A stretch of DNA of 64,000 bases, from positions 62,001 through 126,000 of the IMG/VR virus record IMGVR_UViG_3300032116_000004; one strand, given 5' to 3'. The notes under the pieces were generated by a model. The model searched no databases and had not been told where the DNA came from. It saw only the letters and a program-made list of their open reading frames with translations. Shown piece after piece: positions 2,508 through 63,719 of this stretch; position 1 is the stretch's first letter; each line of letters opens with the position of its first letter. The position numbers were made by a program, and so were the translations under genes.

Positions 2508-4712
2508 ATGGCCTGCGCAGGCGCACTCACCTCGATCATAATGACTGCGGTTGGCGCATTTATCGCCAACGGAGGCCTCGCAGAAGTGTTTGGTGGAGCA
2601 CCTGTGGCCGGCGCAGCCGGTAGTGCGGCCGAAGGTTTAGTCACTGTGTATACTCCATCGGGTGAAATCTTTTCCATGAGCACTGCTGAAGCAGTGGCGT
2701 CGGGCATCATTGAAAATACTGCGAGCCAATCGTGGTTCAGCGGTCTCGGAGGTCTGGGAGACACTCTCAATTCCATGACCAACAGTTTTTTAGAATTCAC
2801 TGCGCCCATGAGAGAAGCCTGGAGCAATCTAGCCACCGCCCCGGCCGCAGCCGGCAAACAAGTATTCAATTCAGTTTCTGGAACCTGGGGACCAAAAACA
2901 GCACAATTTTTGTCATCGGTCACAGAAGGGGTGTTCAAGACCGCTATCCAAGAAAGTATCACTTGGGCTAGCCAAACTCTTGGGGGCACTGGTACATTGG
3001 TCGCAGGGGCGTTGGTTGGCGATCCCAAGATCCTAGGTCAGGCTTTCAATGCTGCCAATTCTTTCGCGCAGACAGCCAATGGCTTTATCAACGCAGCCGA
3101 GTCGGCCGGAACCTATCTCAACAAAACCTTCACCAACATGGAAAATACCATCACTGCCGGCGTGGATGGAGTCAGCAAATGGTTTGAAGGTCTGGGCGAT
3201 GACATCAGCAAACTAGGCAACACCGTGGACTGGGCCAAACTTGATTTCCTTGGCTATCCAGGACAACTGATCGCCAACCTTGAAAACAGTGGAACACTGG
3301 GCCCATTCTATGACAAACTGGGCAACATCCAGGTAGATCCCCGCACCGCACAGCAGTTGGGAGTGAACATAACCAATGCTTTATTGGGCCGTGAAGAATT
3401 GCGTCTCAAGGATCTCGGCATTGATCTCAATCAGATAGCGCGACAAGGTGCAAATCTGCCCGCCGGCATACAAAAAGAAATATACACAGAACTGACCAAA
3501 CTCACGCCCACTGAAGTCACACAGGTCAAAGGCATATTGAACAACACACAGGTCGCTGTGCAGAAAGGTCAAGACCTACTTGATCCACAAAAACTTTTTG
3601 CCTCCAGCTCCAGCACACTGACCACGCCTATCCGTGTGGGGTCTGTTGGCTTCCGTGGTATCTATGAAGCAAGTGGCAGCATCAATCCTGAACTCAATGA
3701 CTTAGGAGAAAATCTCAAAGGTATCATACCCGATGACCTGGCAGTGGCCAATTCCGCATTGGGCCGCAGTTTCCTACAGGTCAAGGGTATTTCAAATACC
3801 AGCAGTGATTCATTGGCCGCAAGTGTCCTGGAATTGGAAAACCTCAGAGATTTGCCTTTGATAGCCGGTCAGGAAGAATATGTGACCCAACCGGTGATTG
3901 ACTATTGGAAAAATTACTATGGCGAAGATTTTGGCATACAGTTGACCACTGGCAACAATGGGTCATATGTAGTTTCAGACATCGTGGGATTTGCCGCAGG
4001 TTATAATTCAGGACAGCCTCTCCAGGACAATGGCCCGCTGTTGACCAGCCTCAACGCCAATGGTGCCTTTGCGGAATTCACACAAAGCCAGGGCATCTAC
4101 GAAACCATCCAGCAATTCTGTCTAGGCACATTTGGTCCAACTGCCAACCCCACACCAGTGGATCCGCCCAATGATGATTACCAGATAGAGATCCCTGTGG
4201 GATGGGCAGCCGCGGGCATTTATTATGGCGCTACAGGCAATATTGCCTTTCAAGATGCATGGCTAAATGGAATCATTCCTTATACCGCTGTGGCGTCAAC
4301 AGACATCTACGAAAACTATCCAGATGCGCAAACAGTAAACGCCAACGAAACAATCTGGCAAGAGCAGTATGGCAGAGAATATCTCAACAGACAACGTGCA
4401 GATCTCATCGTCACAGATATCAGAGCGTCTGACACAACTGCCATCAATTTTGGACAGTCCTTGCCTCAATTTGGTAGAAACACTGAATTCGGCGGACCGG
4501 CCATGTGGTTAGAGCGTGTGGCCAATGCCAACAGCCTAGGAGGGCAGGCCTTGATCGCTGCCATGCGCGAGGGTCGCAATCAAGCTAGATTGGATGATGC
4601 AGGCATCAAGACGGACACAGCACTGGCCACAGAACAACCGCAGTTCCCAGGAACGCTGGCGCCGAACACTTTGACCAAAGAAGAAGCCGACGCCCTGGTG
4701 ATTCGTTCCTAG
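2508..4712 (+). CDS. Large hypothetical protein, likely virion/baseplate associated
   Basis: 734 aa, Gly/Ala/Thr/Asn-rich, immediately after PAAR. Confidence 0.5.
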   Translation: MACAGALTSIIMTAVGAFIANGGLAEVFGGAPVAGAAGSAAEGLVTVYTPSGEIFSMSTAEAVASGIIENTASQSWFSGLGGLGDTLNSMTNSFLEFTAPMREAWSNLATAPAAAGKQVFNSVSGTWGPKTAQFLSSVTEGVFKTAIQESITWASQTLGGTGTLVAGALVGDPKILGQAFNAANSFAQTANGFINAAESAGTYLNKTFTNMENTITAGVDGVSKWFEGLGDDISKLGNTVDWAKLDFLGYPGQLIANLENSGTLGPFYDKLGNIQVDPRTAQQLGVNITNALLGREELRLKDLGIDLNQIARQGANLPAGIQKEIYTELTKLTPTEVTQVKGILNNTQVAVQKGQDLLDPQKLFASSSSTLTTPIRVGSVGFRGIYEASGSINPELNDLGENLKGIIPDDLAVANSALGRSFLQVKGISNTSSDSLAASVLELENLRDLPLIAGQEEYVTQPVIDYWKNYYGEDFGIQLTTGNNGSYVVSDIVGFAAGYNSGQPLQDNGPLLTSLNANGAFAEFTQSQGIYETIQQFCLGTFGPTANPTPVDPPNDDYQIEIPVGWAAAGIYYGATGNIAFQDAWLNGIIPYTAVASTDIYENYPDAQTVNANETIWQEQYGREYLNRQRADLIVTDIRASDTTAINFGQSLPQFGRNTEFGGPAMWLERVANANSLGGQALIAAMREGRNQARLDDAGIKTDTALATEQPQFPGTLAPNTLTKEEADALVIRS

Positions 4713-5202: not shown

Positions 5203-5375
5203 CACAACGAGATGTCACCTTATCGATCACGTTCACACTGGATGACATCGAGGTGCTCCAGCGCATCTGGAATCGGTATGGTTATGTCATGGACGAGACC
5301 GGCATCATCTCTCACATATTAAACGAATATGAAATGAAGACTGCTGACAGTCTAAATACAAAGGTAAAGGCATGA
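5199..5375 (+). CDS. Small hypothetical protein (58 aa)
   Basis: ATGA overlaps at both ends; read manually. Confidence 0.55.
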   Translation: MTQRDVTLSITFTLDDIEVLQRIWNRYGYVMDETGIISHILNEYEMKTADSLNTKVKA

Positions 5376-6754
5376 CACAGGCACGCGATTGGCACAATGA
5401 TGAATTCAATGGATTAAAAGTGGCGGCAGATTGGATACAAGATCTCGAAGGCTCAGACTCTAGGCTACACAAAGAAGCAGTGATCGAAAAGGCTCTGGTA
5501 GCGGCTCGATTAGGGTCGGCAGGGGCGCAGTGTTTTTTATACAACTGCTACCTGACCTACAATCCTTATTTCGTCTATGGTGTGAAGAAGGTTCCAGAAA
5601 CCCAAGGACTCACAGGAAAAGACAATCCCTGGACTGAGTTCTGGGCTCTCACAGAAGGCCTCCGAACCCGTAGCATCACTGGCAACAAGGCACGTGATAG
5701 GATCGACGAACTGGCCGGTCGTTTTGACTCAGACGAGTGGAACGGCCTGGCCCGTCGTGTGCTGATCAAAGATCTCCGCTGTGGTATTTCAGAAAAGACC
5801 TTAAACAAAGTGCTGGGTAACTCGGAATGGAAGATACCGGTGTTCACTTGCCAACTGGCGCAAGACTCGGGCGATCATCCGGCCAAGATGAAAGGTCGAA
5901 AACGTATCGAATGTAAACTGGATGGTGTGCGTGTGCTGGCAGTGGTCAGCGGTAGCACAGTGAACCTCTACAGCCGCAACGGCAAACCCTTTGACAACTT
6001 TCCGCAGATCGCTGAAGCCATAGAAGATTGCAGGGCTGTGTTCCGTCACGGACTGAACTCAGGTGGTAGATTTGTGTTGGATGGTGAGATCGTGGGAGAG
6101 TCATTCCAGAAACTCATGCGTCAAGCACATCGTAAAAGCGATGCCCAAACTGATGGCATGGTTTATCATATCTTTGATATCATTCCTCTGGAAGATTTTG
6201 AGCGTGGGTTCTGGAACGCACAACAGCACAAGAGACTGGACATACTTAACCGGGCAATGGAACCGCTACAAGAGCAGACCGATTGCCTCCGTATCATGCC
6301 CGGACTGGAAGTGGATCTCGACACCGGAGAAGGTCATGACATCATGGATCGATTCGCCCAAGATGCTGTCACGGCCGGCTATGAAGGTATCATGATCAAG
6401 TCGGTGGATGCGCCCTATGAGTGCAAGCGAACGTCTTTTTGGATGAAGTGGAAACCCACCATAACAGTGGATTTGGAAATCGTGGGTTTCGAACAAGGAA
6501 CTGGTCGCAACGAAAAGCGATTGGGTGCTATAATTTGTGAAGGAGATGACAATGGCAGAAATATTCGTGTTAATGTTGGCAGTGGTTTGTCTGATAGCGA
6601 TAGGGATGACTTCTGGACCGCTCGCGATGACCTACTTGGTCGATTGGTTGAAATCCAAGCGGACGCAGTCACACAAAACCAAGACGGATCATACTCACTG
6701 AGATTTCCACGATTCGTGAGATTCCGTGGGTTTGAACCTGGAGAAAAAATTTGA
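5372..6754 (+). CDS. lig: ATP-dependent DNA ligase
   Basis: KLDGVR adenylation motif, LDGEI, EGIMIK, WMKWK, VGSG, SLRFPRF. Confidence 0.95.
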   Translation: MTQARDWHNDEFNGLKVAADWIQDLEGSDSRLHKEAVIEKALVAARLGSAGAQCFLYNCYLTYNPYFVYGVKKVPETQGLTGKDNPWTEFWALTEGLRTRSITGNKARDRIDELAGRFDSDEWNGLARRVLIKDLRCGISEKTLNKVLGNSEWKIPVFTCQLAQDSGDHPAKMKGRKRIECKLDGVRVLAVVSGSTVNLYSRNGKPFDNFPQIAEAIEDCRAVFRHGLNSGGRFVLDGEIVGESFQKLMRQAHRKSDAQTDGMVYHIFDIIPLEDFERGFWNAQQHKRLDILNRAMEPLQEQTDCLRIMPGLEVDLDTGEGHDIMDRFAQDAVTAGYEGIMIKSVDAPYECKRTSFWMKWKPTITVDLEIVGFEQGTGRNEKRLGAIICEGDDNGRNIRVNVGSGLSDSDRDDFWTARDDLLGRLVEIQADAVTQNQDGSYSLRFPRFVRFRGFEPGEKI

Positions 6755-8673: not shown

Positions 8674-10233
8674 ATGTTTCTCACATACTTGATGCTGGCT
8701 GTGGCGCTGTGCCTCAGCGCCATCGCCGCATTCTATTCGATCATAGGTCTCACTGCCATATTTGCCGCGGCTGTGATTCCTGTGGCCGTCATGGGAACCA
8801 TATTGGAGATAGCCAAACTAACGGTCACTGTATGGTTGCATGAATACTGGCATCGTTGTAAACGAGCCATGAAAATATACTTGGTGCCTGCGGTGGGTAT
8901 GCTGATGTTGATCACTTCCATGGGCATCTTTGGCTTCCTGTCAAAGGCCCATCTAGATCAAGCAGTTCCCACTGGGGATGTGGCCGCACAAGTGGCCTTG
9001 CTAGACGAAAAGATAAAGACACAGCGAGACAACATCGAAGCCGCCCGACGTGCCCTGGCCCAGATGGATGCGGCTGTGGACCAAACACTCAGCAGATCAT
9101 CTGACGAGAAGGGTGCTGACAAAGCCGCGGCACTGCGCCGTGCTCAGGCCCGTGAGCGTGGCAACCTGCAAGGAGACATCTCTCGCGCACAGACCGAGAT
9201 AGCAAAATTAAACGAACAACGGGCACCCATAGCCGCAAATCTACGCAAAGTAGAAGCCGAGGTAGGTCCAATCAAATACATAGCGGCCTTGATCTATGGA
9301 GACAATCCTGATGCCAACTTACTGGAAAAGGCCGTGCGTTGGGTGATCATAATACTTGTGGTAGTGTTTGATCCCTTGGCCATATTCATGTTGTTGGCCG
9401 CCACTGAGAGTTACAAGTGGGAAAAATACGGTGCTCGAGATGATCCCGATGAACCAGAAAATCCGCCACCTGACAGCCCAGTGATGGATCGCATAAACGA
9501 ATGGCGCGACAAAATAAAAAAATGGAGGCAACCCAATGGTACCAATGCTGATGATGGCCAACCTATTGCCCAGGATCTGGCTAGACAACCTGACAGAGAT
9601 GATGCTGATGTTCAACCCACCGCTCCGATGGTGGCTATCCCACCTACGCAATGGGGCGGGCAAGATCTAACAAAACAAATCGTTGAAAATAATCGGCCCG
9701 GTGAACCTGTTTATGTCGACATGCCGGACATTGTCACTGTGCGTCCGGATGTGCAGTATGTAGGTGATGCCGATGAAGAAGAAACTCCTGAAGAAAAAGA
9801 TCCTGTAAAAAGGGCCAAGCGCCAATGGAAAGCGGACAATCCTGATGACACTTTACACAGACACGAAAAATTGTTGGCACAGGGCAAGATAGAACGACTA
9901 CCATGGGAACAGAGTCTACAACTGCAGGCAGATGATCAAGAACAATATGCCAATGTTGATTTTGGAACACGATTCCCTACAACTCCCGGTCGTGGGGATG
10001 CGTTTATCCGTGTAGATTTCCTGCCAACTAAACTGTTCAAATGGAATGGTGCGAAATGGATTGAAGTGGACAAAGAAATCACTGATTCATTCACCTACAA
10101 TGATGAGTATATCGAATATCTAATCGCCAAGATCGGTTCTGGTGAGTATGATGCTGATCTGCTCAACGAAAACGAAAGACAACAAATAGAAGCTAGGCTA
10201 CGAGATGATCCCAAATTCAACGGTCCAGCATGA
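8674..10233 (+). CDS. Membrane protein with coiled-coil and C-terminal soluble domain
   Basis: Three N-terminal TM helices, long coiled coil, further TM helix; TAAATA at 8663-8668. Confidence 0.75.
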   Translation: MFLTYLMLAVALCLSAIAAFYSIIGLTAIFAAAVIPVAVMGTILEIAKLTVTVWLHEYWHRCKRAMKIYLVPAVGMLMLITSMGIFGFLSKAHLDQAVPTGDVAAQVALLDEKIKTQRDNIEAARRALAQMDAAVDQTLSRSSDEKGADKAAALRRAQARERGNLQGDISRAQTEIAKLNEQRAPIAANLRKVEAEVGPIKYIAALIYGDNPDANLLEKAVRWVIIILVVVFDPLAIFMLLAATESYKWEKYGARDDPDEPENPPPDSPVMDRINEWRDKIKKWRQPNGTNADDGQPIAQDLARQPDRDDADVQPTAPMVAIPPTQWGGQDLTKQIVENNRPGEPVYVDMPDIVTVRPDVQYVGDADEEETPEEKDPVKRAKRQWKADNPDDTLHRHEKLLAQGKIERLPWEQSLQLQADDQEQYANVDFGTRFPTTPGRGDAFIRVDFLPTKLFKWNGAKWIEVDKEITDSFTYNDEYIEYLIAKIGSGEYDADLLNENERQQIEARLRDDPKFNGPA

Positions 10234-11429
10234 AAGAAGATACTTCATACGAACTTTGCAGTTTCTGCAACAAACACAAAGACGATGTTAAAAAACTCAT
10301 AGTGGCCAATGATGTGGCCATCTGCAACGATTGCGTGGATCTTTGCCAAAAACTCTTGCAAGAGGATCCGGTAACGAGAGAACACAATCACACAGACATT
10401 GATCCTCAAGAACTCAAACGTTATCTAGATCAGTATGTGATAGGGCAGGACCGTGCCAAGGTTGTCTTGGCAGTGGCCATCGCCAATCATTACAAACGCA
10501 TACAGAATCGCGATCCTGAAATAGAACTAGACAAGGCCAATATCCTGATGCTGGGCCCCACAGGATCGGGCAAGACCCTGCTGGCTCGCACCGTGGCACG
10601 TTATCTCGACGTGCCTTTTGCCATCGCAGATGCCACTAGCATAACCGAAGCCGGATATGTGGGCGATGATGTAGAAAGTCTCATACAGCGATTGCTCACT
10701 GCCGCTGGTGGCGATGTGGAAAAATGTCGTCGTGGTATAATATTTGTTGATGAAATTGACAAGATCGCTCGAAAAAGCGAATCAACATCTATCACCAGAG
10801 ATGTGAGTGGTGAAGGTGTGCAACAGGCCCTGTTGAAGCTGGTAGAAGGCACAGTATGCCGAGTTCCGGCTGGTGGCGGCCGCAAACACCCTGGTGGCGA
10901 AATGATCGAAATAGACACTGCCAATATACTGTTCATTGCCGGCGGCGCATTCGTGGGCCTAGACCAGATAGTGAAGAAACGACTGTTCGGGTCCTCCATG
11001 GGATTCAATGCTGAAGTCAAAGTATCAGGTGACGTGGATCTACAAAAGACCATGCCCGATGATCTGGTAAAATTTGGTCTGATACCTGAATTCGTCGGCC
11101 GTTTCCCTAGTTGGGTCAGCCTAGATGAACTGACCACGGATGATCTGGTGCATGTGCTCACAGATACCAAGAATTCATTGATACGTCAATATCAACACCT
11201 GTTTGCTTCAGACAGCATAGATCTTGATTTCGAGAACGAGGCCTTGACCACCATAGCACAGCGTTCTGCAGATTTCGGTACTGGTGCCCGCGCCTTGCAC
11301 AGCGAACTTGAGCGTGTGTTGATGCCACACATGTTCGCTATCAAACGCTATCGTGATCGGGGGATAAACCGCGTAGTTATTAACCGAGAGCAAATAAATA
11401 ACCCACAACCCGTTTACAAGGAGGAATAG
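10230..11429 (+). CDS. clpX: ClpX ATP-dependent protease ATPase subunit
   Basis: C4 zinc finger (CSFC..CNDC), GPTGSGKT, AGYVG, DEIDK, RDVSGEGVQQALLK, RKH, MGF loop, GAR. Confidence 0.97.
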   Translation: MKEDTSYELCSFCNKHKDDVKKLIVANDVAICNDCVDLCQKLLQEDPVTREHNHTDIDPQELKRYLDQYVIGQDRAKVVLAVAIANHYKRIQNRDPEIELDKANILMLGPTGSGKTLLARTVARYLDVPFAIADATSITEAGYVGDDVESLIQRLLTAAGGDVEKCRRGIIFVDEIDKIARKSESTSITRDVSGEGVQQALLKLVEGTVCRVPAGGGRKHPGGEMIEIDTANILFIAGGAFVGLDQIVKKRLFGSSMGFNAEVKVSGDVDLQKTMPDDLVKFGLIPEFVGRFPSWVSLDELTTDDLVHVLTDTKNSLIRQYQHLFASDSIDLDFENEALTTIAQRSADFGTGARALHSELERVLMPHMFAIKRYRDRGINRVVINREQINNPQPVYKEE

Positions 11430-20245: not shown

Positions 20246-21475
20246 CCCTTGGTTGAGTCGTAGATGTCTGACCAGGTGCAAGGTGTATTTGTTAGATCGC
20301 GGACTCTGAGGCAAGTGTTGCTTTCGCCATTGACGCACATACCACCAGTATGAAGGATCCAATTTGTTCTGGGTCCTTCCATATGCTTGCATGACGTTAT
20401 GGTAAAGTTCATCTTTTATGAATTTCAGGAAATTATCCGAAAAGAACCGTTGTTTATTTCTCTGGGCCACGGCCCAGCAATGAGCAAGTATTTCATTGAG
20501 TTGTTCGGGAGCCATTGAAGACAACCTGTCAACCTCTTTGAGTATGAGATCAAGGCGGGTGGAATGATCGGACTCATGATCGTATGACTCATCAATCCAA
20601 GGGCTAAAAGTCTCAAATCCATAGTATTTTAACACTGCCAGGGCGCCGGGTCCGGCAGCCAAGATAAATGGATGTCCGCAGGCTATGGGCCTGAGTGTTT
20701 TCTCAGTCAAGTGTATCCTTGGATCTTCAAACAGAGTTTCCAAGATCAGGCTTATACCAGTCTTGCAAAAATCTTCACTGTTATAATAGGCGCTGGCCAT
20801 GGCATCTGCTGTTGTAGGATTTGCAAAATCACATTGTCCATTGTGTTTTAGATGATCCATGACCTGTTGGCGATATTGTCTGGTACCAGTCTGATCTCTG
20901 CAATATATCAAAAATATTTTTTTGATCTTTTTTCTCTCGAGACTTTGATCATGTTGGGCAAATCTATACCAATCACGGGCAATCAACGCATGGCTCCACC
21001 AGTAAGCGCCGCAATAACGACCAGTGGATTCATATTTTTGCAGTTGAGGGGAATTGATTTCAGAATGCAATAGGATCCATTGTTTTTGCCAAGACCATAC
21101 TATGGTGTTTCTGAGATTTTGATCCTGCACAGGAAAGTTATAATCCTGTCGATTGAACTCTTCGGTTTTGTGTAACAACGGCTGTCCATCTTGATACAGT
21201 TCATAATTCAGTGGTTCTTGATCATGACAAAACAATACCGGTTGGAAATTCCTAGCCAATGAAAATCTGCTTAGTCCTATCTGATCTGGATCTAAGAAGG
21301 TTTCTCCCAGCAGATTATCTATGCCATTGGGTCCTTTTGTGTGTTCATAGTCCTTTTGGTAGTCCAAAACGTTCTTGAGATCTTTATTACCCCATTGGTA
21401 AAAATACAACAACCAGAAACGTTTTTCTGTGACCTGATGTATAAAATCGTATAAATTATGAGCAGGCACTGTCAT
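20174..21475 (-). CDS. Glycosyltransferase-like (GT-B-type C-terminal region) phage protein
   Basis: LILET..HLTEKTLRPI..GHPFI..GFETF..IDESYD. Confidence 0.55.
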   Translation of the reverse strand: MTVPAHNLYDFIHQVTEKRFWLLYFYQWGNKDLKNVLDYQKDYEHTKGPNGIDNLLGETFLDPDQIGLSRFSLARNFQPVLFCHDQEPLNYELYQDGQPLLHKTEEFNRQDYNFPVQDQNLRNTIVWSWQKQWILLHSEINSPQLQKYESTGRYCGAYWWSHALIARDWYRFAQHDQSLERKKIKKIFLIYCRDQTGTRQYRQQVMDHLKHNGQCDFANPTTADAMASAYYNSEDFCKTGISLILETLFEDPRIHLTEKTLRPIACGHPFILAAGPGALAVLKYYGFETFSPWIDESYDHESDHSTRLDLILKEVDRLSSMAPEQLNEILAHCWAVAQRNKQRFFSDNFLKFIKDELYHNVMQAYGRTQNKLDPSYWWYVRQWRKQHLPQSPRSNKYTLHLVRHLRLNQGSLEQYQRHDHSLDDESGTNCDNV

Positions 21476-21490
21476 TTAATGGAGGAAACA

Positions 21491-22735
21491 ATGAATATAG
21501 GTTTTATTGGTCTAGGAAAACTGGGTCTAGACTGTGCAGAGGTATTTGCTGAACGTTACACAGTCCGAGGGTATGATATATATCCGAGGTATAGTGATAC
21601 CGTTGAAGTTTGTGGCATTGACGAAGTGGTCAAAAAAAGCGACTGGATCTTTATCGCTGTGCCAACTCCACACGCCGAGGGCTATGATGGATCAGTGCCC
21701 AGCTCGCACATGGAGCCTCGAGACTTTGGGCATGATGCGGTGAAAGACGCTATTAGTCAGATCAATGAACATGCTGACACACCCAAGCGTGTGGTATTGA
21801 TCTCTACAGTGTTGCCGGGAACCACACGCAGACATTTTGCCAACTTGTTGGGTCCACAGCATCAGTTCCTTTATAATCCTTACCTCATAGCCATGGGCTC
21901 GGTCAAATGGGATATGGCCAATCCCGAAATGGTCATGATCGGGACAGAAACTGGTGATGCATCTGAGATGCGTGATCTAATCGATCTATATCGCCCGTTG
22001 ATGAAAAACAATCCCCGTTATGTCACAGGTACCTGGGACGAGTGCGAAGCCATCAAGATTTTCTACAACACATTCATTTCTGCCAAGGTTGGACTGGTGA
22101 ACATGATACAGGATTTTGCGCTGAAGATTGGCAACATCAATGTGGATGTTGTGACCGATGCCCTTGCCCAATCAACCATGCGTATCATGGGACCCAAATA
22201 CATGACCGCGGGCATGGGCGATGCAGGTGCTTGCCATCCTCGAGACAACATCGCCTTGCGTTGGTTGGCCGAAGAGTATGACATTGGCTATGACTTGTTT
22301 GACACCATCATGCATGCTCGAGAAATACAAGCAAAAAATCTAGCACACTTTTTAGTAGACCAAGCCAAAGAAAAGAATTTGCCTATAGTCATACATGGCA
22401 AGGCATACAAGCCTGATGTTGCCTACTGTATCGGTAGCTACTCCACGTTGATAGGATTCTATATCAAGGAGGCCGGTTATTCTGTGAAATACTTAGATCC
22501 CTTGGCAGATGACAGCGACGATGTAGTCCAATCGATCACTGGTCCTTGTGTATTGTTGCTGGCACACAATCGACAAATCACCTATGGATACACTGGTGAT
22601 GTGAGAGATGACACGTTCTATTCTCCCATAGCCTATGGTTCTGTCATTGTTGATCCTTGGCGGAAAATGCCTTCTACACCACAATATAATGTGATCCATT
22701 ATGGCAACACACGAGATGGCCGGACTGGATTATAA
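21491..22735 (+). CDS. ugd: UDP-glucose/GDP-mannose dehydrogenase family protein
   Basis: GFIGLGKLG, IAVPTP, STVLPG, NPY, KIFYN, GACHPRD, AYKP. Confidence 0.88.
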   Translation: MNIGFIGLGKLGLDCAEVFAERYTVRGYDIYPRYSDTVEVCGIDEVVKKSDWIFIAVPTPHAEGYDGSVPSSHMEPRDFGHDAVKDAISQINEHADTPKRVVLISTVLPGTTRRHFANLLGPQHQFLYNPYLIAMGSVKWDMANPEMVMIGTETGDASEMRDLIDLYRPLMKNNPRYVTGTWDECEAIKIFYNTFISAKVGLVNMIQDFALKIGNINVDVVTDALAQSTMRIMGPKYMTAGMGDAGACHPRDNIALRWLAEEYDIGYDLFDTIMHAREIQAKNLAHFLVDQAKEKNLPIVIHGKAYKPDVAYCIGSYSTLIGFYIKEAGYSVKYLDPLADDSDDVVQSITGPCVLLLAHNRQITYGYTGDVRDDTFYSPIAYGSVIVDPWRKMPSTPQYNVIHYGNTRDGRTGL

Positions 22736-37102: not shown

Positions 37103-37693
37103 ATGCCCAATCTAGTGCCTATCGTGCTGGAACAGACTAGCCGTGGAGAACGCAGTTATGACATCTACAGCCGCCTGCTGAGAGATCGCATCATCATGCT
37201 GGATACAGACGTAAACTCACATTCAGCCAGCCTCATAGTGGCGCAGATGCTGTTCCTAGAAGCGGAAAATCCTGACAGAGACATCTTGTTCTATATCAAC
37301 TCACCAGGCGGGTCAATCACAGCGGGCATGAGCATCTATGATACCATGCAGTTCATCAAGTGTGATGTTTCTACCATAGTGTGTGGATTGGCCGCGTCGA
37401 TGGGCTCCATGCTGGCCTGCGCCGGCACTGCTGGCAAGCGGTTCATCCTGCCACACAGCCAGCACATGATCCATCAACCTCTGGGTGGAGCTGAAGGACA
37501 GGTCACTGAAGTGGAGATCCGTTACAAAGAACTCATGCGCTGGAAGAAGACCTTGACTGAACTCTATGTCCAGCACACCGGCAAAGACTATGCGACTCTG
37601 GAGAAAGATATGGATCGAGACAACTGGATGACAGCACAACAGGCCGTGGAGTATGGCCTAGCTGATCGCATCATCACCCAACGAGATGTCTAA
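37103..37693 (+). CDS. clpP: ClpP protease proteolytic subunit
   Basis: [46 protein letters not shown]. Confidence 0.97.
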
Positions 37694-39008
37694 TCAAAGA
37701 ATATTCTGCAACAGCCCGTGGTATGAATTACATATCTACTGGGACGGCGCTTTGGCGTTTTGCTGTCATGCCACTCCCAATGTTCCCTATGATACATCGC
37801 TGAAACAGCGATACAACATCAGGAACATGTCCATAAAGGAGTGGTATGATTCTGTGCCCATGCGTGAAGCTAGATTACAAGTGCTAGGGGATCAGCAATG
37901 GAATCATTGTGCTAGATGCTGGCACGAAGAACAGGTCAGTGACACCAGTCGTCGGCATCGTAGCAATCAGAAATCAGTGATATTCACCAAGCAGAATTTT
38001 GCAGAAAGTTACCAGCAAAGTCCTGGGTTCGAAAAATTTGAACACAGTCGATCCAACGCAGGTGCATATGATGGCATGCCAATCGATCTGCACATTGATC
38101 TTGGCAACTACTGCAATCTCGCCTGCAAGATGTGTAACCCGTCAGCATCCAGCCGCATCGCCAGCCAACATCGTCAATGGAACATGATCAGTGCTGTATC
38201 ACAGGATTGGACCGCTGATCCAGAAGTATGGAATAGATTCCGCGAGGAGTTAGTATCAATATCCAAACTCAAGAACATACATTTCATGGGCGGGGAGACC
38301 ATAATACAACCTCGGTTCCATGATCTAGTGGATTTCCTGATCGATCATGGTCGCACAGATGTGTGCATGAGTTTCGTGACCAATGGCACTTCCTTTGACA
38401 AAAAGATCATCGAAAAACTCAAACGGTTCCCCAGGGTGGGTCTTGAGATCAGCATAGAAACTCTGGACACGCTCAATGAATACACTCGCCAGGGCACAGA
38501 TAATAGCATGGTGCTGGCCAACATCGAGAATTACATCAATGAGTGCAATGGCACCACGATCACAGTGACCTTGAGACCAGCACCGGGATTGCTGACAGTG
38601 CGCAGTTATTGGCAAGTCATTGAGTTGGCTTTGCAAAAGGGGTTGTTGATCAAAAGCAATCTCTGCACAGATCCAGATTTCCTTGATATCACTGTGGTAC
38701 CCAAAAACATAAGAGATCAGTATCGACTGCCATATCTTGATTTGTTGACAAGATATGCACTGGATGAAGCCGATGTGTGGTCTGACTATAACGAAAGTGA
38801 CCCCAACAACTTCCGCAGGGTGGCCAAAAATCAGATATTACAAATACTGCGGATATTGGATCTACCAGAACCTGATGATCGAGATCGTCGTTGGTCAGCA
38901 TTGGTACAGCATCTCGATCGCTGGGATCGTGTGTTTGGATTTGACGCTCGTGTGTTGTATCCAGAATTTGCCCACATACTTGACAAGCATGGCTACCTAC
39001 AGAACTAA
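37686..39008 (+). CDS. Radical SAM protein with N-terminal SPASM/Twitch-like Cys cluster
   Basis: [14 protein letters not shown]; N-terminal C..PW...CC...CxxC. Confidence 0.88.
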
Positions 39009-39730: not shown

Positions 39731-39795
39731 AGGTTAGTGCGCACTAACCCAGTGTTTTTGCCCAGGTTGACCAGAAATCGCCATTTTGCTATAAT
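39731..39795 (+). promoter_or_regulatory. Palindrome plus early promoter cassette, copy 2
   Basis: Perfect GGTTAGTGCGCACTAACC (39732-39749); TTGACC-17-TATAAT. Confidence 0.88.
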
Positions 39796-39824: not shown

Positions 39825-40199
39825 ATGAGCGACTTTAAATCTTGGGAAGAAATGTCAGATCTAGAACGTGCATCATGCACTTTCTGGGACATGTATAAAG
39901 ACGCCTACGGTGTGCGCCCACGTGGCATCGACACCAGCGGCTGGACCTTGGCGGATTTCGACCGCGAGTTTGCATCCCTAGGTCAGGTCATCGAAGCCGA
40001 AGAAGCCCAACGCCGCGAAAGCGAAGCCGAGGCCACGGCCCGGGTGGAGAAAGCCATTGACACCCTGATGCGTTCAGGTGCCCGGGATCGTGCGACAGCG
40101 ATACGTTGGTTGCATGAATCACACGATACCCAGGGAGACGATGAGTATCTCTGTTTCCAACTGGGCCTGCCTTACGGTTATTTCCGTAAGGCGGCTTGA
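39825..40199 (+). CDS. Conserved early phage protein
   Basis: WDMYKDAYGVRPRG; GARDRATAIRW; GLPYGYF. Confidence 0.8.
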   Translation: MSDFKSWEEMSDLERASCTFWDMYKDAYGVRPRGIDTSGWTLADFDREFASLGQVIEAEEAQRRESEAEATARVEKAIDTLMRSGARDRATAIRWLHESHDTQGDDEYLCFQLGLPYGYFRKAA

Positions 40200-40310
40200 T
40201 GTTTGAGGCCGTGATAGGCAGGTGCCTGCCTTGGGGAGCCTTGATACCCCAGAACCCGAAGCAGTCTATTTTTGCTGATTATAGACTATAAAGAAAAATC
40301 AGCACTTATT
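40200..40310 (+). ncRNA. Candidate structured RNA (two hairpins plus H-type pseudoknot)
   Basis: AGGCAGG/CCTGCCT; TGGGG/CCCCA; AGTCTAT/ATAGACT crossing TGCTGATT/AATCAGCA. Confidence 0.5.
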
Positions 40311-40329
40311 ATATCACAAGGAGATACAC

Positions 40330-40605
40330 ATGCCCACAATCAGCGAAGTCAATCACGAAATCATGCACGGCGATTTCACCAATGATCAACTCAATGCCAT
40401 CGCCCTGGCCATCAAGTATCGCCGGCGCCAGATTGGACAAGAAGTAAAAGTCACCATCCGTGTGGGCACTCCGGTGAAGTTCTATCATCCCAAACTGGGC
40501 CAGGACATCTTTGGCACCGTGGACCGTGTGAAGCAGAAATTTATCCTGGTGCAGACACTGGGTGGTCGCTACAATGTTCCGGCCAACCTTTTGGAACGAG
40601 TATGA
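40330..40605 (+). CDS. Small early protein, SH3-like C-terminus
   Basis: AAGGAG RBS; G..VKF...GTV..VK.K...V......V...LL. Confidence 0.7.
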   Translation: MPTISEVNHEIMHGDFTNDQLNAIALAIKYRRRQIGQEVKVTIRVGTPVKFYHPKLGQDIFGTVDRVKQKFILVQTLGGRYNVPANLLERV

Positions 40606-41057
40606 AACAGCAGATCCGATACGATCATACCTTTGAGTTTGACCTCACGGGCCGGGTGCAGTTTGGTGATCTGCCCATAGATACCGTGCATGACTTGTTC
40701 CAGGATGGTCGTGTGGCCAGCAAGTTCCTGGAGAACATCTTGCCAGTATGGTTCGAAGATCTAGAATACGTGGATCAAGACGGCTATGATCATGTGCAGA
40801 CATCCACTGGTCGCAGGCTGGACCTCAAAGGCTTCACCCGCGGTGGTGCCAGTTATGCTCCCAGCAACATGCTGGGTGCCGGGCGCAAGATCGATAGAGA
40901 GAAATTGCATGAGCATGCTCTCACCATCGACTACATACTGAGTGATATCACAGAATTCCCCCGGGTGCGCATCGTGTTCAAACGTGGAACCGAATTGGTA
41001 GAAAACTATCCTGCGGGCAAGATACCCACACAAGAACGAGAACGACTGTTTGGATAA
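40602..41057 (+). CDS. Putative PD-(D/E)xK type II restriction endonuclease (PvuII-like)
   Basis: DLFQD..., GYD-x10-DLK, C-terminal KIP; directly upstream of an MTase. Confidence 0.5.
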   Translation: MKQQIRYDHTFEFDLTGRVQFGDLPIDTVHDLFQDGRVASKFLENILPVWFEDLEYVDQDGYDHVQTSTGRRLDLKGFTRGGASYAPSNMLGAGRKIDREKLHEHALTIDYILSDITEFPRVRIVFKRGTELVENYPAGKIPTQERERLFG

Positions 41058-41844
41058 AAATAACATCATATTGCAGGACTGCGTTACAGGCATGCAGGCC
41101 TTGCCCGAAGCCAGTGTCGATATCTGCGTGACTTCTCCGCCCTACAACCTGGGCATTGGTTACAGCACCTATCGCGACGACCGGCCACGGCAGGACTATC
41201 TCCGATGGCTGGGGTCGGTGTTCGGCGAGATCAAAAGAGTGCTGACCGATGACGGACACTTCTGGCTCAACGTAGGTTACAGCAATCAAGATCCCTGGGT
41301 GGCACAAGACGTGGCGCAGGTGGCTCGTGATCATTTCGTGCTCCAGAATTCCGTGATGTGGGTCAAATCGATCTATGTCAACGGAAAGACATCGGGACAC
41401 TTCAAACCAGTGAACTCCGAACGTTACATCGCTCCCACATGGGAGCATGTGTTCCATTTCACCAAGGCAGGTCGGAGCCCATTGGACAAACTCACCATTG
41501 GTGTGCCCTACGAATACTATGCGGAGAATCTACGCAATCCCAAGACTGCCGGAACCAAACCCAATCTACGCTGTCGTGGCAACACCTGGTTCATACCCTA
41601 TGAGACCATCAGCAACCGGGCCAAGCATCGAGGCGATCATCCGGCCACTTTTCCTGTGGCCTTGGCCGAAAATTGCATCCGTGTGTCAGGCATCACATCA
41701 GGCACTGTGCTGGACCCATTCATGGGATCAGGCACTACTGCCATCGCGGCCCATCGCTGTGGTCTGTCATGGATGGGCTTTGAAATTGATGCAAACTACA
41801 GGGACTTTGCCCTGGATCGCATAGCCGCAGAAACCGCTGGTTGA
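41050..41844 (+). CDS. Beta-class DNA methyltransferase (N4-C/N6-A)
   Basis: TSPPY, HPATFP, VLDPFMGSGTT. Confidence 0.93.
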   Translation: MDKNNIILQDCVTGMQALPEASVDICVTSPPYNLGIGYSTYRDDRPRQDYLRWLGSVFGEIKRVLTDDGHFWLNVGYSNQDPWVAQDVAQVARDHFVLQNSVMWVKSIYVNGKTSGHFKPVNSERYIAPTWEHVFHFTKAGRSPLDKLTIGVPYEYYAENLRNPKTAGTKPNLRCRGNTWFIPYETISNRAKHRGDHPATFPVALAENCIRVSGITSGTVLDPFMGSGTTAIAAHRCGLSWMGFEIDANYRDFALDRIAAETAG

Positions 41845-42107: not shown

Positions 42108-42156
42108 GTGCGCACTAACCTAGCGGTTGACCAAAAAAGCCATTTTCGGTTATAAT
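42100..42156 (+). promoter_or_regulatory. Palindrome plus early promoter cassette, copy 3
   Basis: CTAGGTAAGTGCGCACTAACCTAG; TTGACC-18-TATAAT. Confidence 0.88.
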
Positions 42157-42185
42157 ATAGGTATAGTAAACATCAAGGAGCAGAT

Positions 42186-54522: not shown

Positions 54523-54582
54523 GTGGGCACTAACCTACGGGTTTTTGCCCAGGTTGACCGAAATTTACCATTTTGCTATAAT
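54516..54582 (+). promoter_or_regulatory. Palindrome plus early promoter cassette, copy 5
   Basis: TAGGTAAGTGGGCACTAACCTA; TTGACC-17-TATAAT. Confidence 0.88.
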
Positions 54583-54614
54583 ATAGGTATAGTAAATGAT
54601 AAGGAGTTAGCCCT

Positions 54615-61552: not shown

Positions 61553-62316
61553 CACCAAAACAACGTATCAACTACATTACAAAGTGGATTAAAAGTTATG
61601 CCACCAGACACAAAATCAATACCTTGGTGGTGGGTGTATCGGGCGGCATAGATTCGGCCGTGGTATCCACGCTGTGTGCTCGTGCAGGACTGTATGTCAT
61701 TGCTGTGAGCATGCCCATCCGGCAAAGCGAACACACACATGATCTCAGCATGCGGCATGGACAGTGGCTGAAAGACACGTTTGAACTGGTGGATCACTTT
61801 GTTATCGATCTCACATCCGCCTTTGAACAATTTGAACATGCTACCCGTGTGTTCAGCGATGAACTGGCCTATGCCAACAGTCGTGCTAGATTACGCATGA
61901 TGACCTTGTATCAATTAGCGCAAGCCAACTCCGGCATCGTTGTGGGCACAGGCAACAAGGTTGAAGACTTTGGAGTGGGGTTCTTTACCAAGTATGGCGA
62001 CGGTGGTGTGGATATCAGTCCCATTGGAGACTGCATGAAAACTGAAGTGTGGGCCATGGGTCGTGAACTGGGCGTGTTGCAAGATATCATTGATGCCGCT
62101 CCCACTGATGGTTTATGGGCAGATGGTCGCACTGACGAACAACAGTTAGGCATGACCTACGCCGACCTTGAAGTGGCCATGCGCATGGACCAGGGCGAAA
62201 TACAGTGCGATAACAAAGAGCTCAAGAAAAATCTAAAACGATATCGAGAGATCCGTGCTCGCAATCTACACAAGATGCAGGCTATTCCGGTGTGTAAATT
62301 CAAAGATCAAGAATGA
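61549..62316 (+). CDS. nadE: NH3-dependent NAD+ synthetase
   Basis: GVSGGIDSA, N.RARLRM, GTGN..E, FFTKYGDG, PTDGLW, TDE. Confidence 0.93.
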   Translation: MTPKQRINYITKWIKSYATRHKINTLVVGVSGGIDSAVVSTLCARAGLYVIAVSMPIRQSEHTHDLSMRHGQWLKDTFELVDHFVIDLTSAFEQFEHATRVFSDELAYANSRARLRMMTLYQLAQANSGIVVGTGNKVEDFGVGFFTKYGDGGVDISPIGDCMKTEVWAMGRELGVLQDIIDAAPTDGLWADGRTDEQQLGMTYADLEVAMRMDQGEIQCDNKELKKNLKRYREIRARNLHKMQAIPVCKFKDQE

Positions 62317-63719
62317 CGCCTTGGCAGGAATTTTATCTAAGCATAAAAGATTCATCATGGCCGGACTGCGACCATGAACAAGATTTTTTATCTCTACCAC
62401 AGTGGATACAGGATGAGTGTCAACAAGTTCATGGTTATGTGATAGGTAGTTACAGAAATCAGCCTCGATATCAACACAAAACATTTCCCATAAAAACTGC
62501 CACAGCTTGTCAACTCAAATGGAACTGGAGCACAGTTTATCTTACGACAGAAAATACTGCCAGTTGTCATCGCACCAATCATCACAAGTTTGATATCGAT
62601 GTATTTGATTTTCACAACACTCCTAGCAAGTTGGACGATAGATCTCGCATGCTCCAGGGATTTTGGCCCGAAAAAGGTTGTGGTTATTGTCGAGATATAG
62701 AAACGGCCGGAGGACAAAGTGACAGGATAACCAATCTTGATATGCCTGGAATGTTTGCTCCGCCAGAACTGGATGATGATCTTGTTGCTATCCAAGTCAC
62801 TCCTCGTATATTAGAAGTTTACTTTGACAATGTCTGTAATTTGAAATGTGTGTATTGCGGTCCGCATTTCAGCAGTTTATGGGATGCTGAAAACAAAAAA
62901 CATGGTAAGTTTGAAAAAAATGGTTTGATCATCTCGAATACATTTAAGAAAAGTCCTGATATCGCAAAAAATAAAACCAAGATGTTTGAGTGGATATCGC
63001 AACACGGACATAGCCTTACCAACTTTAATTTCCTTGGCGGCGAGCCTTTGTTCCAAAAAGATCTCGATGATTGTCTGGATTTTTTTGATCACAACCCAAT
63101 GCCGGAACTAGAGTTCCAGATTTTTACCAATCTCAATGCTACTCCGGCTCGAGTGTCTGCGGTGGTAAGCAAAATTAAAAATCTCATTGACAAACAACAT
63201 CTCAAAACTTTTGTGGTAACTGCCAGTCTCGATTGCTGGGGACCTGAACAAGAATATGCACGTTTTCCTCTCAAACTAGACATTTGGGAAAAAAATTTCC
63301 GATACCTGCTTGATCAATCTTGGATTAGATTAATAGTAGGTAGCACACTGACTCCTCTCACTATCAAGACTCTGCCTGATCTTATTGAGCGCATCAATCA
63401 ATGGAGAAAGATACGCCATGTATCTCATTACATGAACAGTGCAGAATCACCGTTGCACATGCATGTTGATATTTTAGGCGATGTTTTCGTGGATGATTTT
63501 AATAGAGCTATCCAGATCATGCCCGAGAATGATGCGGAGCAGATCAATATCAAAAAATATCTGCAAGGCATTGCTCAAGAAAGCGCCAGCAAAGGATTTG
63601 ACACAGAGGAAATCATAAAGCTCCGAGAATTTTTAACCGAACTCGATCGGCGTAGAGCAACCAATTGGCAACGAGTTTTTCCTTGGTTAGAGCCTATTTT
63701 TCAGCAGGTTGACCAATAA
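62313..63719 (+). CDS. Radical SAM protein with N-terminal Cys cluster
   Basis: CNLKCVYC, GGEP; N-terminal CQLKW..SCH..C.YC. Confidence 0.88.
   Translation: MTPWQEFYLSIKDSSWPDCDHEQDFLSLPQWIQDECQQVHGYVIGSYRNQPRYQHKTFPIKTATACQLKWNWSTVYLTTENTASCHRTNHHKFDIDVFDFHNTPSKLDDRSRMLQGFWPEKGCGYCRDIETAGGQSDRITNLDMPGMFAPPELDDDLVAIQVTPRILEVYFDNVCNLKCVYCGPHFSSLWDAENKKHGKFEKNGLIISNTFKKSPDIAKNKTKMFEWISQHGHSLTNFNFLGGEPLFQKDLDDCLDFFDHNPMPELEFQIFTNLNATPARVSAVVSKIKNLIDKQHLKTFVVTASLDCWGPEQEYARFPLKLDIWEKNFRYLLDQSWIRLIVGSTLTPLTIKTLPDLIERINQWRKIRHVSHYMNSAESPLHMHVDILGDVFVDDFNRAIQIMPENDAEQINIKKYLQGIAQESASKGFDTEEIIKLREFLTELDRRRATNWQRVFPWLEPIFQQVDQ

What the first reader, a model, noticed from the sequence alone, without database searches (positions are those of the whole stretch)
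40200..40310. Intergenic structured RNA ending in a classic H-type pseudoknot
Seen: a 130-nt gap within an otherwise packed early operon. It holds hairpins AGGCAGG/CCTGCCT (40216-31) and TGGGG/CCCCA (40232-51). Then S1 AGTCTAT(40263-69)/ATAGACT(40281-87) crosses S2 TGCTGATT(40273-80)/AATCAGCA(40297-304), with L1=TTT, L2=0 and an A-rich L3, ending about 13 nt before the SD of 40330. Known: U-rich L1 with A-rich L3 is typical of triple-stabilised pseudoknots, and T4 gene 32 uses a pseudoknot as translational operator. Inference: a riboswitch-like element, RNase barrier or operator controlling the downstream genes, which include the putative nuclease.
Basis: partly seen in the sequence, partly recalled or inferred. 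Interest (0 to 1): 0.6.

Follow-up and report, generated by a model that had tools for sequence, protein, structure and literature searches.

The report
Conserved double-pseudoknot RNA of jumbo phages
The pseudoknot is real: it is the 3' half of a ~100-base RNA element with two pseudoknots that uncultured T4-type giant phages keep as one strongly conserved copy among otherwise shuffled early genes; what it does, most likely control of the adjoining message, is still unknown.

Summary
On its own, the 7+8 bp crossing pair is only marginally beyond chance: about 0.19 are expected per 316-kb genome. Comparative data settle the question. The 130-nt gap holds a ~100-nt sense-strand RNA element (40205-40304). 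I found it in at least 55 distinct sequence contexts from uncultured phages. Compensatory changes occur in all five helices, including both crossing helices S1 and S2.

The phage is a 316-kb T4-type myovirus. Each of six genomes that are 80% or more complete carries exactly one copy. The copy always lies in sense orientation inside the early-gene array, but between unrelated genes. The 3' pseudoknot is the constant module. The 5' domain comes in at least four sequence types of the same topology.

There is no Rfam match. Neither of two exact motifs occurs in 185,579 prokaryote genomes, and no cultured phage matches. The function is not established. My best guess is a cis-acting leader or operator placed 8-21 nt before a ribosome-binding site. 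A processed trans-acting RNA is nearly as likely. Membership in the riboswitch, gene-32 operator and terminator families is not supported.

The parts
40205..40304 (+). Whole conserved RNA element: two consecutive H-type pseudoknots
   Evidence: Alignment A1 of 24 homologues has 82% mean column identity. The covariance model R1 scores the window copy at 124 bits and finds it only once in the genome.
40205..40209 (+). 5' arm of the 5' pseudoknot (GAGGC). It pairs with 40238-40242.
   Evidence: Invariant in type A. A variant lineage (L270, L289, L307) changes AAGGC/GCCUU to AUGGU/ACCAU, so 2 of 5 pairs change on both sides.
40216..40231 (+). Hairpin 1: 6 bp with a GUGC tetraloop, embedded in loop 1 of the 5' pseudoknot
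   Evidence: 4 of 6 pairs show changes on both sides. Conserved G.U pairs fix the RNA to the + strand.
40232..40251 (+). Hairpin 2: UGGGG/CCCCA with a 10-nt loop. Loop bases 40238-42 (GCCUU) form the 3' arm of the 5' pseudoknot.
   Evidence: The loop is invariant in type A. The stem covaries in L050, L263 and L289: 3 of 5 pairs change on both sides in A3.
40263..40287 (+). S1 of the 3' pseudoknot: 40263-69 pairs with 40281-87. L1 (40270-72) and the 5' arm of S2 (40273-80) lie inside it.
   Evidence: A 5-bp core is conserved. The fifth pair reads UA in 16 sequences, AU in 11 and GU in 4. The outer pair reads AU in 33, GU in 5 and GC in 1. The two inner pairs form only in some lineages.
40273..40304 (+). 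S2 of the 3' pseudoknot: 40273-80 pairs with 40297-304. The A-rich L3 is 40288-96.
   Evidence: 98% of cells are paired across 39 distinct sequences. Pair 2 reads GC in 28, AU in 8 and GU in 3. Pair 6 reads GC in 37 and AU in 2, the window being one of the AU cases.
40305..40329 (+). A/U-rich linker, SD AAGGAG (40318-23) and spacer before the ATG at 40330
   Evidence: In 28 of 31 distinct copies an SD-like motif starts 8-21 nt after S2.
39767..39795 (+). Context: sigma-70 early promoter of the transcription unit (TTGACC-17-TATAAT), preceded by a terminator hairpin at 39732-49
   Evidence: The same cassette recurs genome-wide.
39825..40199 (+). Context: upstream ORF, 124 aa, phrog_21968, function unknown
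40330..40605 (+). Context: downstream ORF, 91 aa, no family match

Best explanation
SHOWN: bases 40205-40304 encode a sense-strand RNA of about 100 nt that folds into two consecutive H-type pseudoknots. In the 5' one, (G)AGGC pairs with GCCU(U) in the loop of hairpin 2, crossing the UGGGG/CCCCA stem, and hairpin 1 is embedded in its loop 1. It is a conserved module of uncultured T4-type jumbo phages. One copy was found in each of six genomes that are 80% or more complete. It sits in the hyperplastic early region between unrelated ORFs and is transcribed as part of early mRNA from sigma-70 promoter cassettes. INFERRED (mechanism, about 0.4): it acts in cis on the message that carries it. The constant 3' pseudoknot sits 8-21 nt upstream of a Shine-Dalgarno sequence, separated by an A/U-rich single-stranded linker. 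There it would sit on the 30S platform side of the initiation site. It could serve as a docking or nucleation site for a trans-acting factor (a phage protein, ribosomal protein S1 or the 30S subunit). It could also be a mechanically stable block to 5'-to-3' decay. Either way it would set translation and/or lifetime of the downstream cistron in a variable cargo slot. The upstream pseudoknot(s) would be auxiliary, insulating the 3' pseudoknot from ribosomes that terminate at the stop codon, which lies 0-10 nt from the element.
For: Structure: 94.7% of cells are paired. Ten pairs change on both sides, and 0 of 500 shuffles reach the covariation score. Sliding the partners by 1-3 columns drops pairing to 38-54%. 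The same holds for the 3' pseudoknot in 39 distinct sequences of all types and for the 5' pseudoknot with the variant lineage. G.U pairs are conserved on the + strand only. One- and two-base indels between copies exclude a coding reading. Estimated stability: the stacking energies of S1 and S2 sum to about -23 kcal/mol, against -7.8 kcal/mol for the best nested fold; loop penalties are my own estimate. Cis role: an SD follows at 8-21 nt in 28 of 31 distinct copies. In most copies the downstream ORF has no promoter of its own, so transcription must run through the element. In L050 a sigma-70 promoter lies directly upstream, so the element is a 5' leader there. The RBS-proximal pseudoknot is the constant part, while the 5' domains are swapped. 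Copy number: one copy in each of G000-G005.
Against: The regulated gene differs from phage to phage and no shared function is visible. That is odd for a cis regulator kept as a single copy. Among the 31 distinct copies scored, three have no adjacent RBS: L190/191 and L218 (a promoter follows) and L029. L202/208, which that scan did not score, also has a promoter next. Tight spacing on both sides may only reflect genome compaction, and the SD-plus-spacer consensus is general in these phages. No binding partner is identified.
Confidence: 0.4

Rival explanations
1. An independent non-coding RNA gene. The element would be cut out of the early polycistronic transcript, or made from its own promoter, and would act in trans. 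For example, it could be a decoy or inhibitor of a host or defence factor, or a cofactor of a phage protein.
For: There is exactly one copy per genome, however the neighbours change. Sequence conservation is stronger than in the flanking genes: 100% for the element against 84% for the downstream gene in L031. In L190, L202 and L218 a promoter follows, and in L050 a promoter lies directly upstream, so the element behaves like a gene cassette in a PeSL-shuffled region (PMC2839356). The family was found only in viral sequence.
Against: Most copies have neither a promoter nor a terminator of their own, so an unproven processing step is required. No target or partner is known. ARAGORN finds nothing tRNA-like or tmRNA-like. 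The constancy of the RBS-proximal module is not explained.
Confidence: 0.3
2. A transcription terminator or attenuator. S2, followed by a U-tract, would stop part of the early transcription. The pseudoknot, or an extended S2 hairpin, would be the alternative conformer.
For: Most type-A copies carry CUUUUU or CUUAUU right after S2. In the type-A consensus S2 can extend to a 12-bp hairpin of -14.3 kcal/mol that competes with S1. Three copies end a transcription unit.
Against: The window copy has no U-tract (the tail is CUUAUUAUAU) and cannot form the extension. In types B and C the U run lies 4-5 nt from the stem. The S2 loop is 16-20 nt long. The terminator scan did not flag it. The phage's ordinary terminators look quite different.
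Confidence: 0.1
3. A riboswitch whose pseudoknot aptamer senses a small molecule.
For: The H-type pseudoknot with a U-rich L1 and an A-rich L3 resembles the preQ1-I and SAM-II/V aptamers. It sits next to an RBS. It has conserved loop nucleotides.
Against: No Rfam family matches, even at E up to 10. The junction positions are base-paired in some lineages and unpaired in others. The SD is not sequestered. The downstream genes are unrelated small ORFs. The 5' domain is replaced wholesale in types B and C.
Confidence: 0.07
4. A DNA-level site: interleaved inverted repeats bound by a protein, or a recombination site. Alternatively, a chance arrangement.
For: Inverted repeats are symmetric in DNA. 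The single-genome statistic is weak: 0.19 expected per genome.
Against: Conserved G.U pairs would be C.A mismatches on the other strand. Compensatory changes keep the pairing rather than the half-site sequence. The orientation is always sense. Dozens of homologues exclude chance.
Confidence: 0.03

Closest known systems
T4/RB69 gene 32 translational operator (pseudoknot plus UUAAA-rich leader; PMC535899)
   Same: T4-type phage. An H-type pseudoknot with coaxial stems and (almost) no L2. It lies 5' of an A/U-rich single-stranded stretch that leads into the RBS.
   Different: The gene-32 operator has a pseudoknot of about 28 nt and more than 40 nt of UUAAA/UAAA repeats, and it sits before the SSB gene. 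Here a 42-nt pseudoknot is preceded by a second pseudoknot, the linker is 8-21 nt without such repeats, the downstream genes vary, and no gp32-family gene was detected.
H-type pseudoknot riboswitch aptamers (preQ1-I, SAM-II, SAM-V)
   Same: Topology, a U-rich L1, an A-rich L3 of the form ...CUAUAAA(G/A)AAA..., and closeness to the SD.
   Different: No match to any covariance model. P2 is 8 bp long. There is no conserved ligand pocket, no SD sequestration and no link to matching metabolic genes.
Strings of pseudoknots in other RNAs (upstream pseudoknot domain of tobamovirus 3' UTRs, tmRNA PK1-PK4); from my own knowledge
   Same: Two or three consecutive H-type pseudoknots with A-rich loops. One of them lies about a dozen nucleotides before a start or resume codon.
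   Different: There is no tRNA-like domain. This is a DNA phage, the RNA is embedded in mRNA, and there is no sequence similarity.
PeSL promoter-terminator cassettes of T4-type hyperplastic regions (PMC2839356, PMC4122927)
   Same: The same genomic habitat. The window has such cassettes at 39732-39795 and before 42186, which explains the shuffled neighbours.
   Different: PeSLs are multi-copy DNA signals (a terminator hairpin plus a sigma-70 promoter). This element is single-copy, has no promoter hexamers on its strand and is conserved as an RNA fold.
Bulk catalogue of 8,495 unnamed candidate structured RNAs from IMG/VR (PMC10690425)
   Same: The same data source and the same kind of object: an intergenic phage RNA with covariation.
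   Different: I could not check whether this motif is listed, because no supplement is held. It is not in Rfam 15.

Membership tests
T4 gene 32 translational operator | RNA pseudoknot at the 5' edge of the translation initiation region | tested here: met
   S1/S2 covary and lie 13 nt before the SD.
T4 gene 32 translational operator | An unstructured stretch of more than 40 nt with UUAAA/UAAA repeats between the pseudoknot and the AUG (PMC535899) | tested here: not met
   The linker plus RBS is 25 nt in the window, with no UUAAA repeat. The SD starts 8-21 nt after S2 in relatives.
T4 gene 32 translational operator | Lies directly upstream of the SSB gene (gene 32), which represses it | tested here: not met
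   The downstream gene is a 91-aa ORF with no family match and differs between phages. PF08804 found nothing in the genome, but the control genomes were also silent, so that search is weak.
Known riboswitch or other Rfam family | Match to the family covariance model | tested here: not met
   cmscan at E up to 10 on the window region and at E up to 1 on seven homologous loci gave no relevant hit.
preQ1-I / SAM-II-type pseudoknot aptamer | Conserved unpaired pocket nucleotides at the helical junction, with the SD sequestered in P2 | tested here: not met
   The junction columns are paired in the window and in L220-225 but unpaired in most others. The SD lies outside the fold.
preQ1-I / SAM-II-type pseudoknot aptamer | Ligand binding | not testable with these tools
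   Needs in-line probing or ITC.
Intrinsic terminator | A G+C-rich hairpin with a short loop, followed at once by a U-tract | tested here: not met
   In the window S2 has 3 G-C pairs out of 8 and a 16-nt loop, and the tail is CUUAUUAUAU. The scan did not flag it. The feature is partly met in type-A relatives, which carry CUUUUU.
PeSL cassette | A terminator stem-loop followed by a sigma-70 early promoter, in multiple copies | tested here: not met
   There is no + strand promoter in 40200-40330 and the element is single-copy.
tRNA / tmRNA-like RNA | Recognised by ARAGORN | tested here: not met
Exoribonuclease-resistant RNA / 5' stabiliser | Blocks a 5'-to-3' exonuclease in an assay | not testable with these tools
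   Only the topology, a compact pseudoknot, is compatible.

The most novel reading that the evidence does not exclude
A previously undescribed class of phage-specific tandem-pseudoknot non-coding RNA. It would be kept as a single essential copy in T4-type jumbo phages, released from early mRNA, and would act in trans. For instance, it could sequester or mimic a host factor such as a ribonuclease, a ribosomal protein or a defence effector.
Probability: 0.25. Interest if true: 0.85.

Novelty: new variant of a known kind. Interest (0 to 1): 0.66.

Why it matters
Pseudoknot leaders are known in phage biology; the T4 gene 32 operator is the textbook case. This element is a separate, widespread family. 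It has two or three pseudoknots and robust covariation, and it has no Rfam entry. No cultured phage carries a detectable copy and no bacterial genome carries either of its two exact motifs. Every near-complete jumbo genome tested has exactly one copy, although the surrounding genes are shuffled. That pattern implies strong selection on the RNA itself. It gives a well-defined, small and easily synthesised target for structure probing, reporter assays and partner pull-downs. It could reveal how giant T4-type phages control, or protect, part of their early programme. The modular design, a constant 3' pseudoknot with interchangeable 5' pseudoknots of the same topology, is also a neat natural experiment in RNA fold evolution.

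Tried and rejected
(1) Near-identity search in GenBank phages: nothing. A blastn search with a type-A and a type-B element also found nothing.

(2) Rfam: only chance-level hits outside the element.

(3) Sigma-70 promoter, MotA-box or late-promoter readings of the AT-rich part. There is no + strand promoter. TATAAAG differs from the phage's own TAAATA late motif. The segment is conserved as paired arms rather than as hexamers. Rejected.

(4) A second copy or a repeat family in the genome: none by blastn, descriptor scan or covariance model.

(5) Small ORFs in the gap, stop-codon readthrough or frameshifting of the upstream gene. Indels of 1-2 nt exclude coding. The in-frame extension hits a TGA after 4 codons, there is no slippery heptamer, and the position of the stop relative to the element varies in frame. 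Rejected.

(6) Synteny or a shared neighbour function: none.

(7) Host clue from prokaryote genomes: two exact-pattern scans found nothing.

I did not try to get reads another way.

(9) Checking the IMG/VR csRNA catalogue: no supplement is held.

(10) Searching five further relatives with the model: four showed no element, but these are 48-68% complete fragments, so this is uninformative.

(11) A formal pair count for the type-B 5' pseudoknot was not run. MAFFT shifted three rows by one column, so that covariation is reported by eye only.

Full report
OBSERVATION. The window is bases 62001-126000 of a 315,778-bp IMG/VR virus record. One search confirms each arm at the stated coordinates. The gap is 130 nt (40200-40329), lying between a 124-aa ORF that ends at 40199 and a 91-aa ORF that starts at 40330. 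Hairpin 1 is really 6 bp around a GUGC tetraloop. The nested MFE fold is unremarkable, z = -0.64. Rfam gives nothing relevant. A descriptor scan finds a perfect 7+8 bp H-type arrangement only here on both strands of the genome. Markov-1 simulations yield 0.19 per genome, and 14% of simulated genomes have one. The genome is not enriched in weaker pseudoknots: 7 against 10.3 expected at 6+6 bp. Gaps of this size are also common, with 109 gaps of 60 nt or more in my crude gene call.

GENOMIC SETTING. The phage has a T4-type major capsid gene, PF07068 with E = 4e-100. Upstream regions genome-wide show two recurring signals. One is a terminator hairpin followed by TTGACC-N17-TATAAT, for example before window 39825, 42186 and 54615 (for the first). 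The other is a TAAATA late-promoter-like motif. The first signal corresponds to the PeSL cassettes that mediate gene shuffling in the hyperplastic regions of T4-type phages (PMC2839356, PMC4122927). The finding lies inside one early unit, running from the promoter at 39767-95 to a terminator near 42110. The neighbours are ClpP, a radical SAM protein, a DNA methylase, DUF6552 and small ORFs with no family match.

RELATIVES. Homologues of the 91-aa gene in IMG/VR at 73% identity or less lack the element. They are preceded by another ORF or by a bare promoter cassette. In L016 and L017 the homologues of the two flanking genes abut. Metagenome contigs gave the key. L031 carries an identical element although its downstream gene is only 84% identical at the DNA level.

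Two pattern scans of IMG/VR followed. The invariant 16-mer of the hairpin-2 loop matched 38 contigs, about 30 of them true homologues of the whole element. In all I count at least 55 distinct sequence contexts. The window's own phage is seen in 53 blocks of the assembly collection. No cultured phage matches. Neither of two exact motifs occurs in 185,579 prokaryote species genomes. Seven homologous loci gave no Rfam hit.

STRUCTURE. I aligned 24 type-A copies (A1). On A1, 94.7% of pair cells are standard pairs. Ten of 31 pairs change on both sides, and no shuffle out of 500 reaches the covariation score. Sliding the partners by 1-3 columns drops pairing to 38-54%. Hairpin 1 covaries at 4 of 6 pairs and keeps G.U pairs that would be C.A on the other strand, so the RNA is the + (sense) strand.

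The 3' pseudoknot was tested in 39 distinct sequences of all types (A2). The S1 core is 5 bp; its fifth pair reads UA 16, AU 11 and GU 4. S2 is 8 bp and 98% paired; its second pair reads GC 28, AU 8 and GU 3. Both crossing helices therefore carry compensatory changes. The window's two extra S1 pairs, and hence L2 = 0, are a lineage feature. Most copies have two unpaired U residues there.

Bases 40205-09 pair with 40238-42 in the otherwise invariant loop of hairpin 2. This pairing is invariant in type A, but in a variant lineage it changes from AAGGC/GCCUU to AUGGU/ACCAU (A3). That is essentially one evolutionary event, so the support is moderate. Hairpin 2 itself covaries in L050, L263 and L289. 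Indels of 1-2 nt exclude a coding reading. The stacking energies of S1 and S2 sum to about -23 kcal/mol, against -7.8 kcal/mol for the best nested fold. With usual loop penalties (my estimate) the pseudoknot should be favoured.

MODULARITY. The covariance model R1 also found copies in which the same 3' pseudoknot is preceded by a different 5' domain. Type B has a GGUCU/AGACC stem crossing a UGGC/GCCA stem, with a small hairpin in loop 1. By eye the second stem covaries, reading GUGC/GCAC in L266 and GGG/CCC in L326. Type C has three pseudoknots in tandem. All the 5' domains share one topology: an H-type pseudoknot with a hairpin embedded in loop 1. The constant part is the RBS-proximal 3' pseudoknot.

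COPY NUMBER AND CONTEXT. R1 finds exactly one copy in the window's genome and one strong match in each of five other jumbo genomes of 289-357 kb, which are 80-100% complete. G005 has one further match at chance level (12 bits, E 0.5). Blast and a descriptor scan find no other copy in the window's genome. Four fragments that are 48-68% complete lacked it, which is uninformative.

Genes within 5 kb on either side are not homologous between the window's phage and the other five, apart from one 92-aa ORF. Upstream genes fall into at least five families, and downstream genes are diverse small ORFs, one of them MazG-like. In G001, G003 and G004 the homologue of the 91-aa gene lies 13-30 kb from the element.

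The element is always in sense orientation. Its 5' edge lies 0-10 nt from the upstream stop codon. In 28 of 31 distinct copies an SD-like motif starts 8-21 nt after S2. The exceptions are L190/191, L202/208 and L218, where a promoter follows, and L029.

INTERPRETATION. It is shown that this is a conserved, phage-specific, sense-strand RNA with two pseudoknots, single-copy, in a shuffled early region. Its function is inferred.

I favour a cis-acting leader or operator (about 0.4). The constant module sits next to an RBS behind an A/U-rich linker. Transcription must pass through it to reach a promoter-less downstream gene. In L050 it is a 5' leader.

A processed trans-acting RNA is nearly as likely (about 0.3). 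One copy is kept whatever the neighbours are, and some copies are bracketed by promoters like a gene cassette.

A terminator or attenuator (about 0.1) has some support: U-tracts follow S2 in many type-A copies, and the consensus allows an alternative 12-bp extended hairpin. The window copy has neither feature. A riboswitch (about 0.07), a DNA-level site and chance are unlikely, for the reasons given under the rival explanations.

COMPARISON WITH KNOWN SYSTEMS. The closest analogue is the gene-32 operator of T4 and RB69, a pseudoknot of about 28 nt followed by more than 40 nt of UUAAA/UAAA-rich leader before the SSB gene (PMC535899). The present element shares the architecture but fails two defining features. 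It has no long UUAAA leader, and it does not precede an SSB gene. PF08804 gave no hit, although the control genomes for that search were silent too.

It resembles preQ1-I and SAM-II aptamers in topology only. A bulk catalogue of 8,495 unnamed IMG/VR candidate RNAs exists (PMC10690425). I could not check whether this motif is among them.

LIMITS. The homologues were collected with exact sequence patterns, so conservation of those segments is overstated and more diverged members are missed. The host is unknown.

Noticed in passing
window 39732-39795; about 42110-42185; about 54540-54614; many sites genome-wide: A repeated cassette: the terminator hairpin GGTTAGTGCGCACTAACC with a T-run, followed by TTGACC-N17-TATAAT and a standard leader with AAGGAG. 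These look like the PeSL shuffling cassettes of T4-type phages.
   Followed up: partly
G000 upstream regions, e.g. before genome positions 53472, 130094, 134203, 155934, 288674, 307076: A TAAATA motif lies about 15-30 nt before many start codons. It is probably this phage's version of the T4 late promoter TATAAATA.
   Followed up: no
window 40336-40308 (minus strand): A promoter-like site, TGGGCA-17-TATAAT with an extended TG, would drive antisense transcription into the element. I did not check it for conservation.
   Followed up: no
window 40167-40194: An 11-bp terminator-like hairpin lies inside the last codons of the upstream ORF. Its tail is poor in T, and the hairpin does not seem conserved in the homologue in L133.
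   Followed up: partly
type-A relatives, e.g. L190:5341-5401(-), L198:5310-5370: In the type-A consensus S2 can extend to a 12-bp hairpin (-14.3 kcal/mol) followed by CUUUUU. This competes with S1 and could be an alternative conformer. It is absent from the window copy.
   Followed up: partly
L226:2520-2680; also L244, L245, L279, L292, L310, L248, L303: These are three-pseudoknot versions of the element. The middle module again has a hairpin in loop 1 and the AGACUAUAAAGAAA signature.
   Followed up: partly
window 37103-37693, 10230-11429, 37686-39008, 62313-63719, 5372-6754, 21458-22735, 41050-41844: The phage encodes ClpP and a ClpX-like ATPase, two radical SAM proteins (one with a SPASM domain), an ATP-dependent DNA ligase, a UDP-glucose dehydrogenase and an N6/N4 DNA methylase.
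   Followed up: no
L016, L017 (match 3001-3261 and the bases just before it): In these small contigs the homologues of the 124-aa and 91-aa genes abut with overlapping stop and start signals and no element between them. So the window's gene pair exists both with and without the RNA.
   Followed up: partly
G000 213600-226700 (outside the window): Upstream-region listings show tRNA-like sequences, which points to a tRNA gene cluster far from the element.
   Followed up: no
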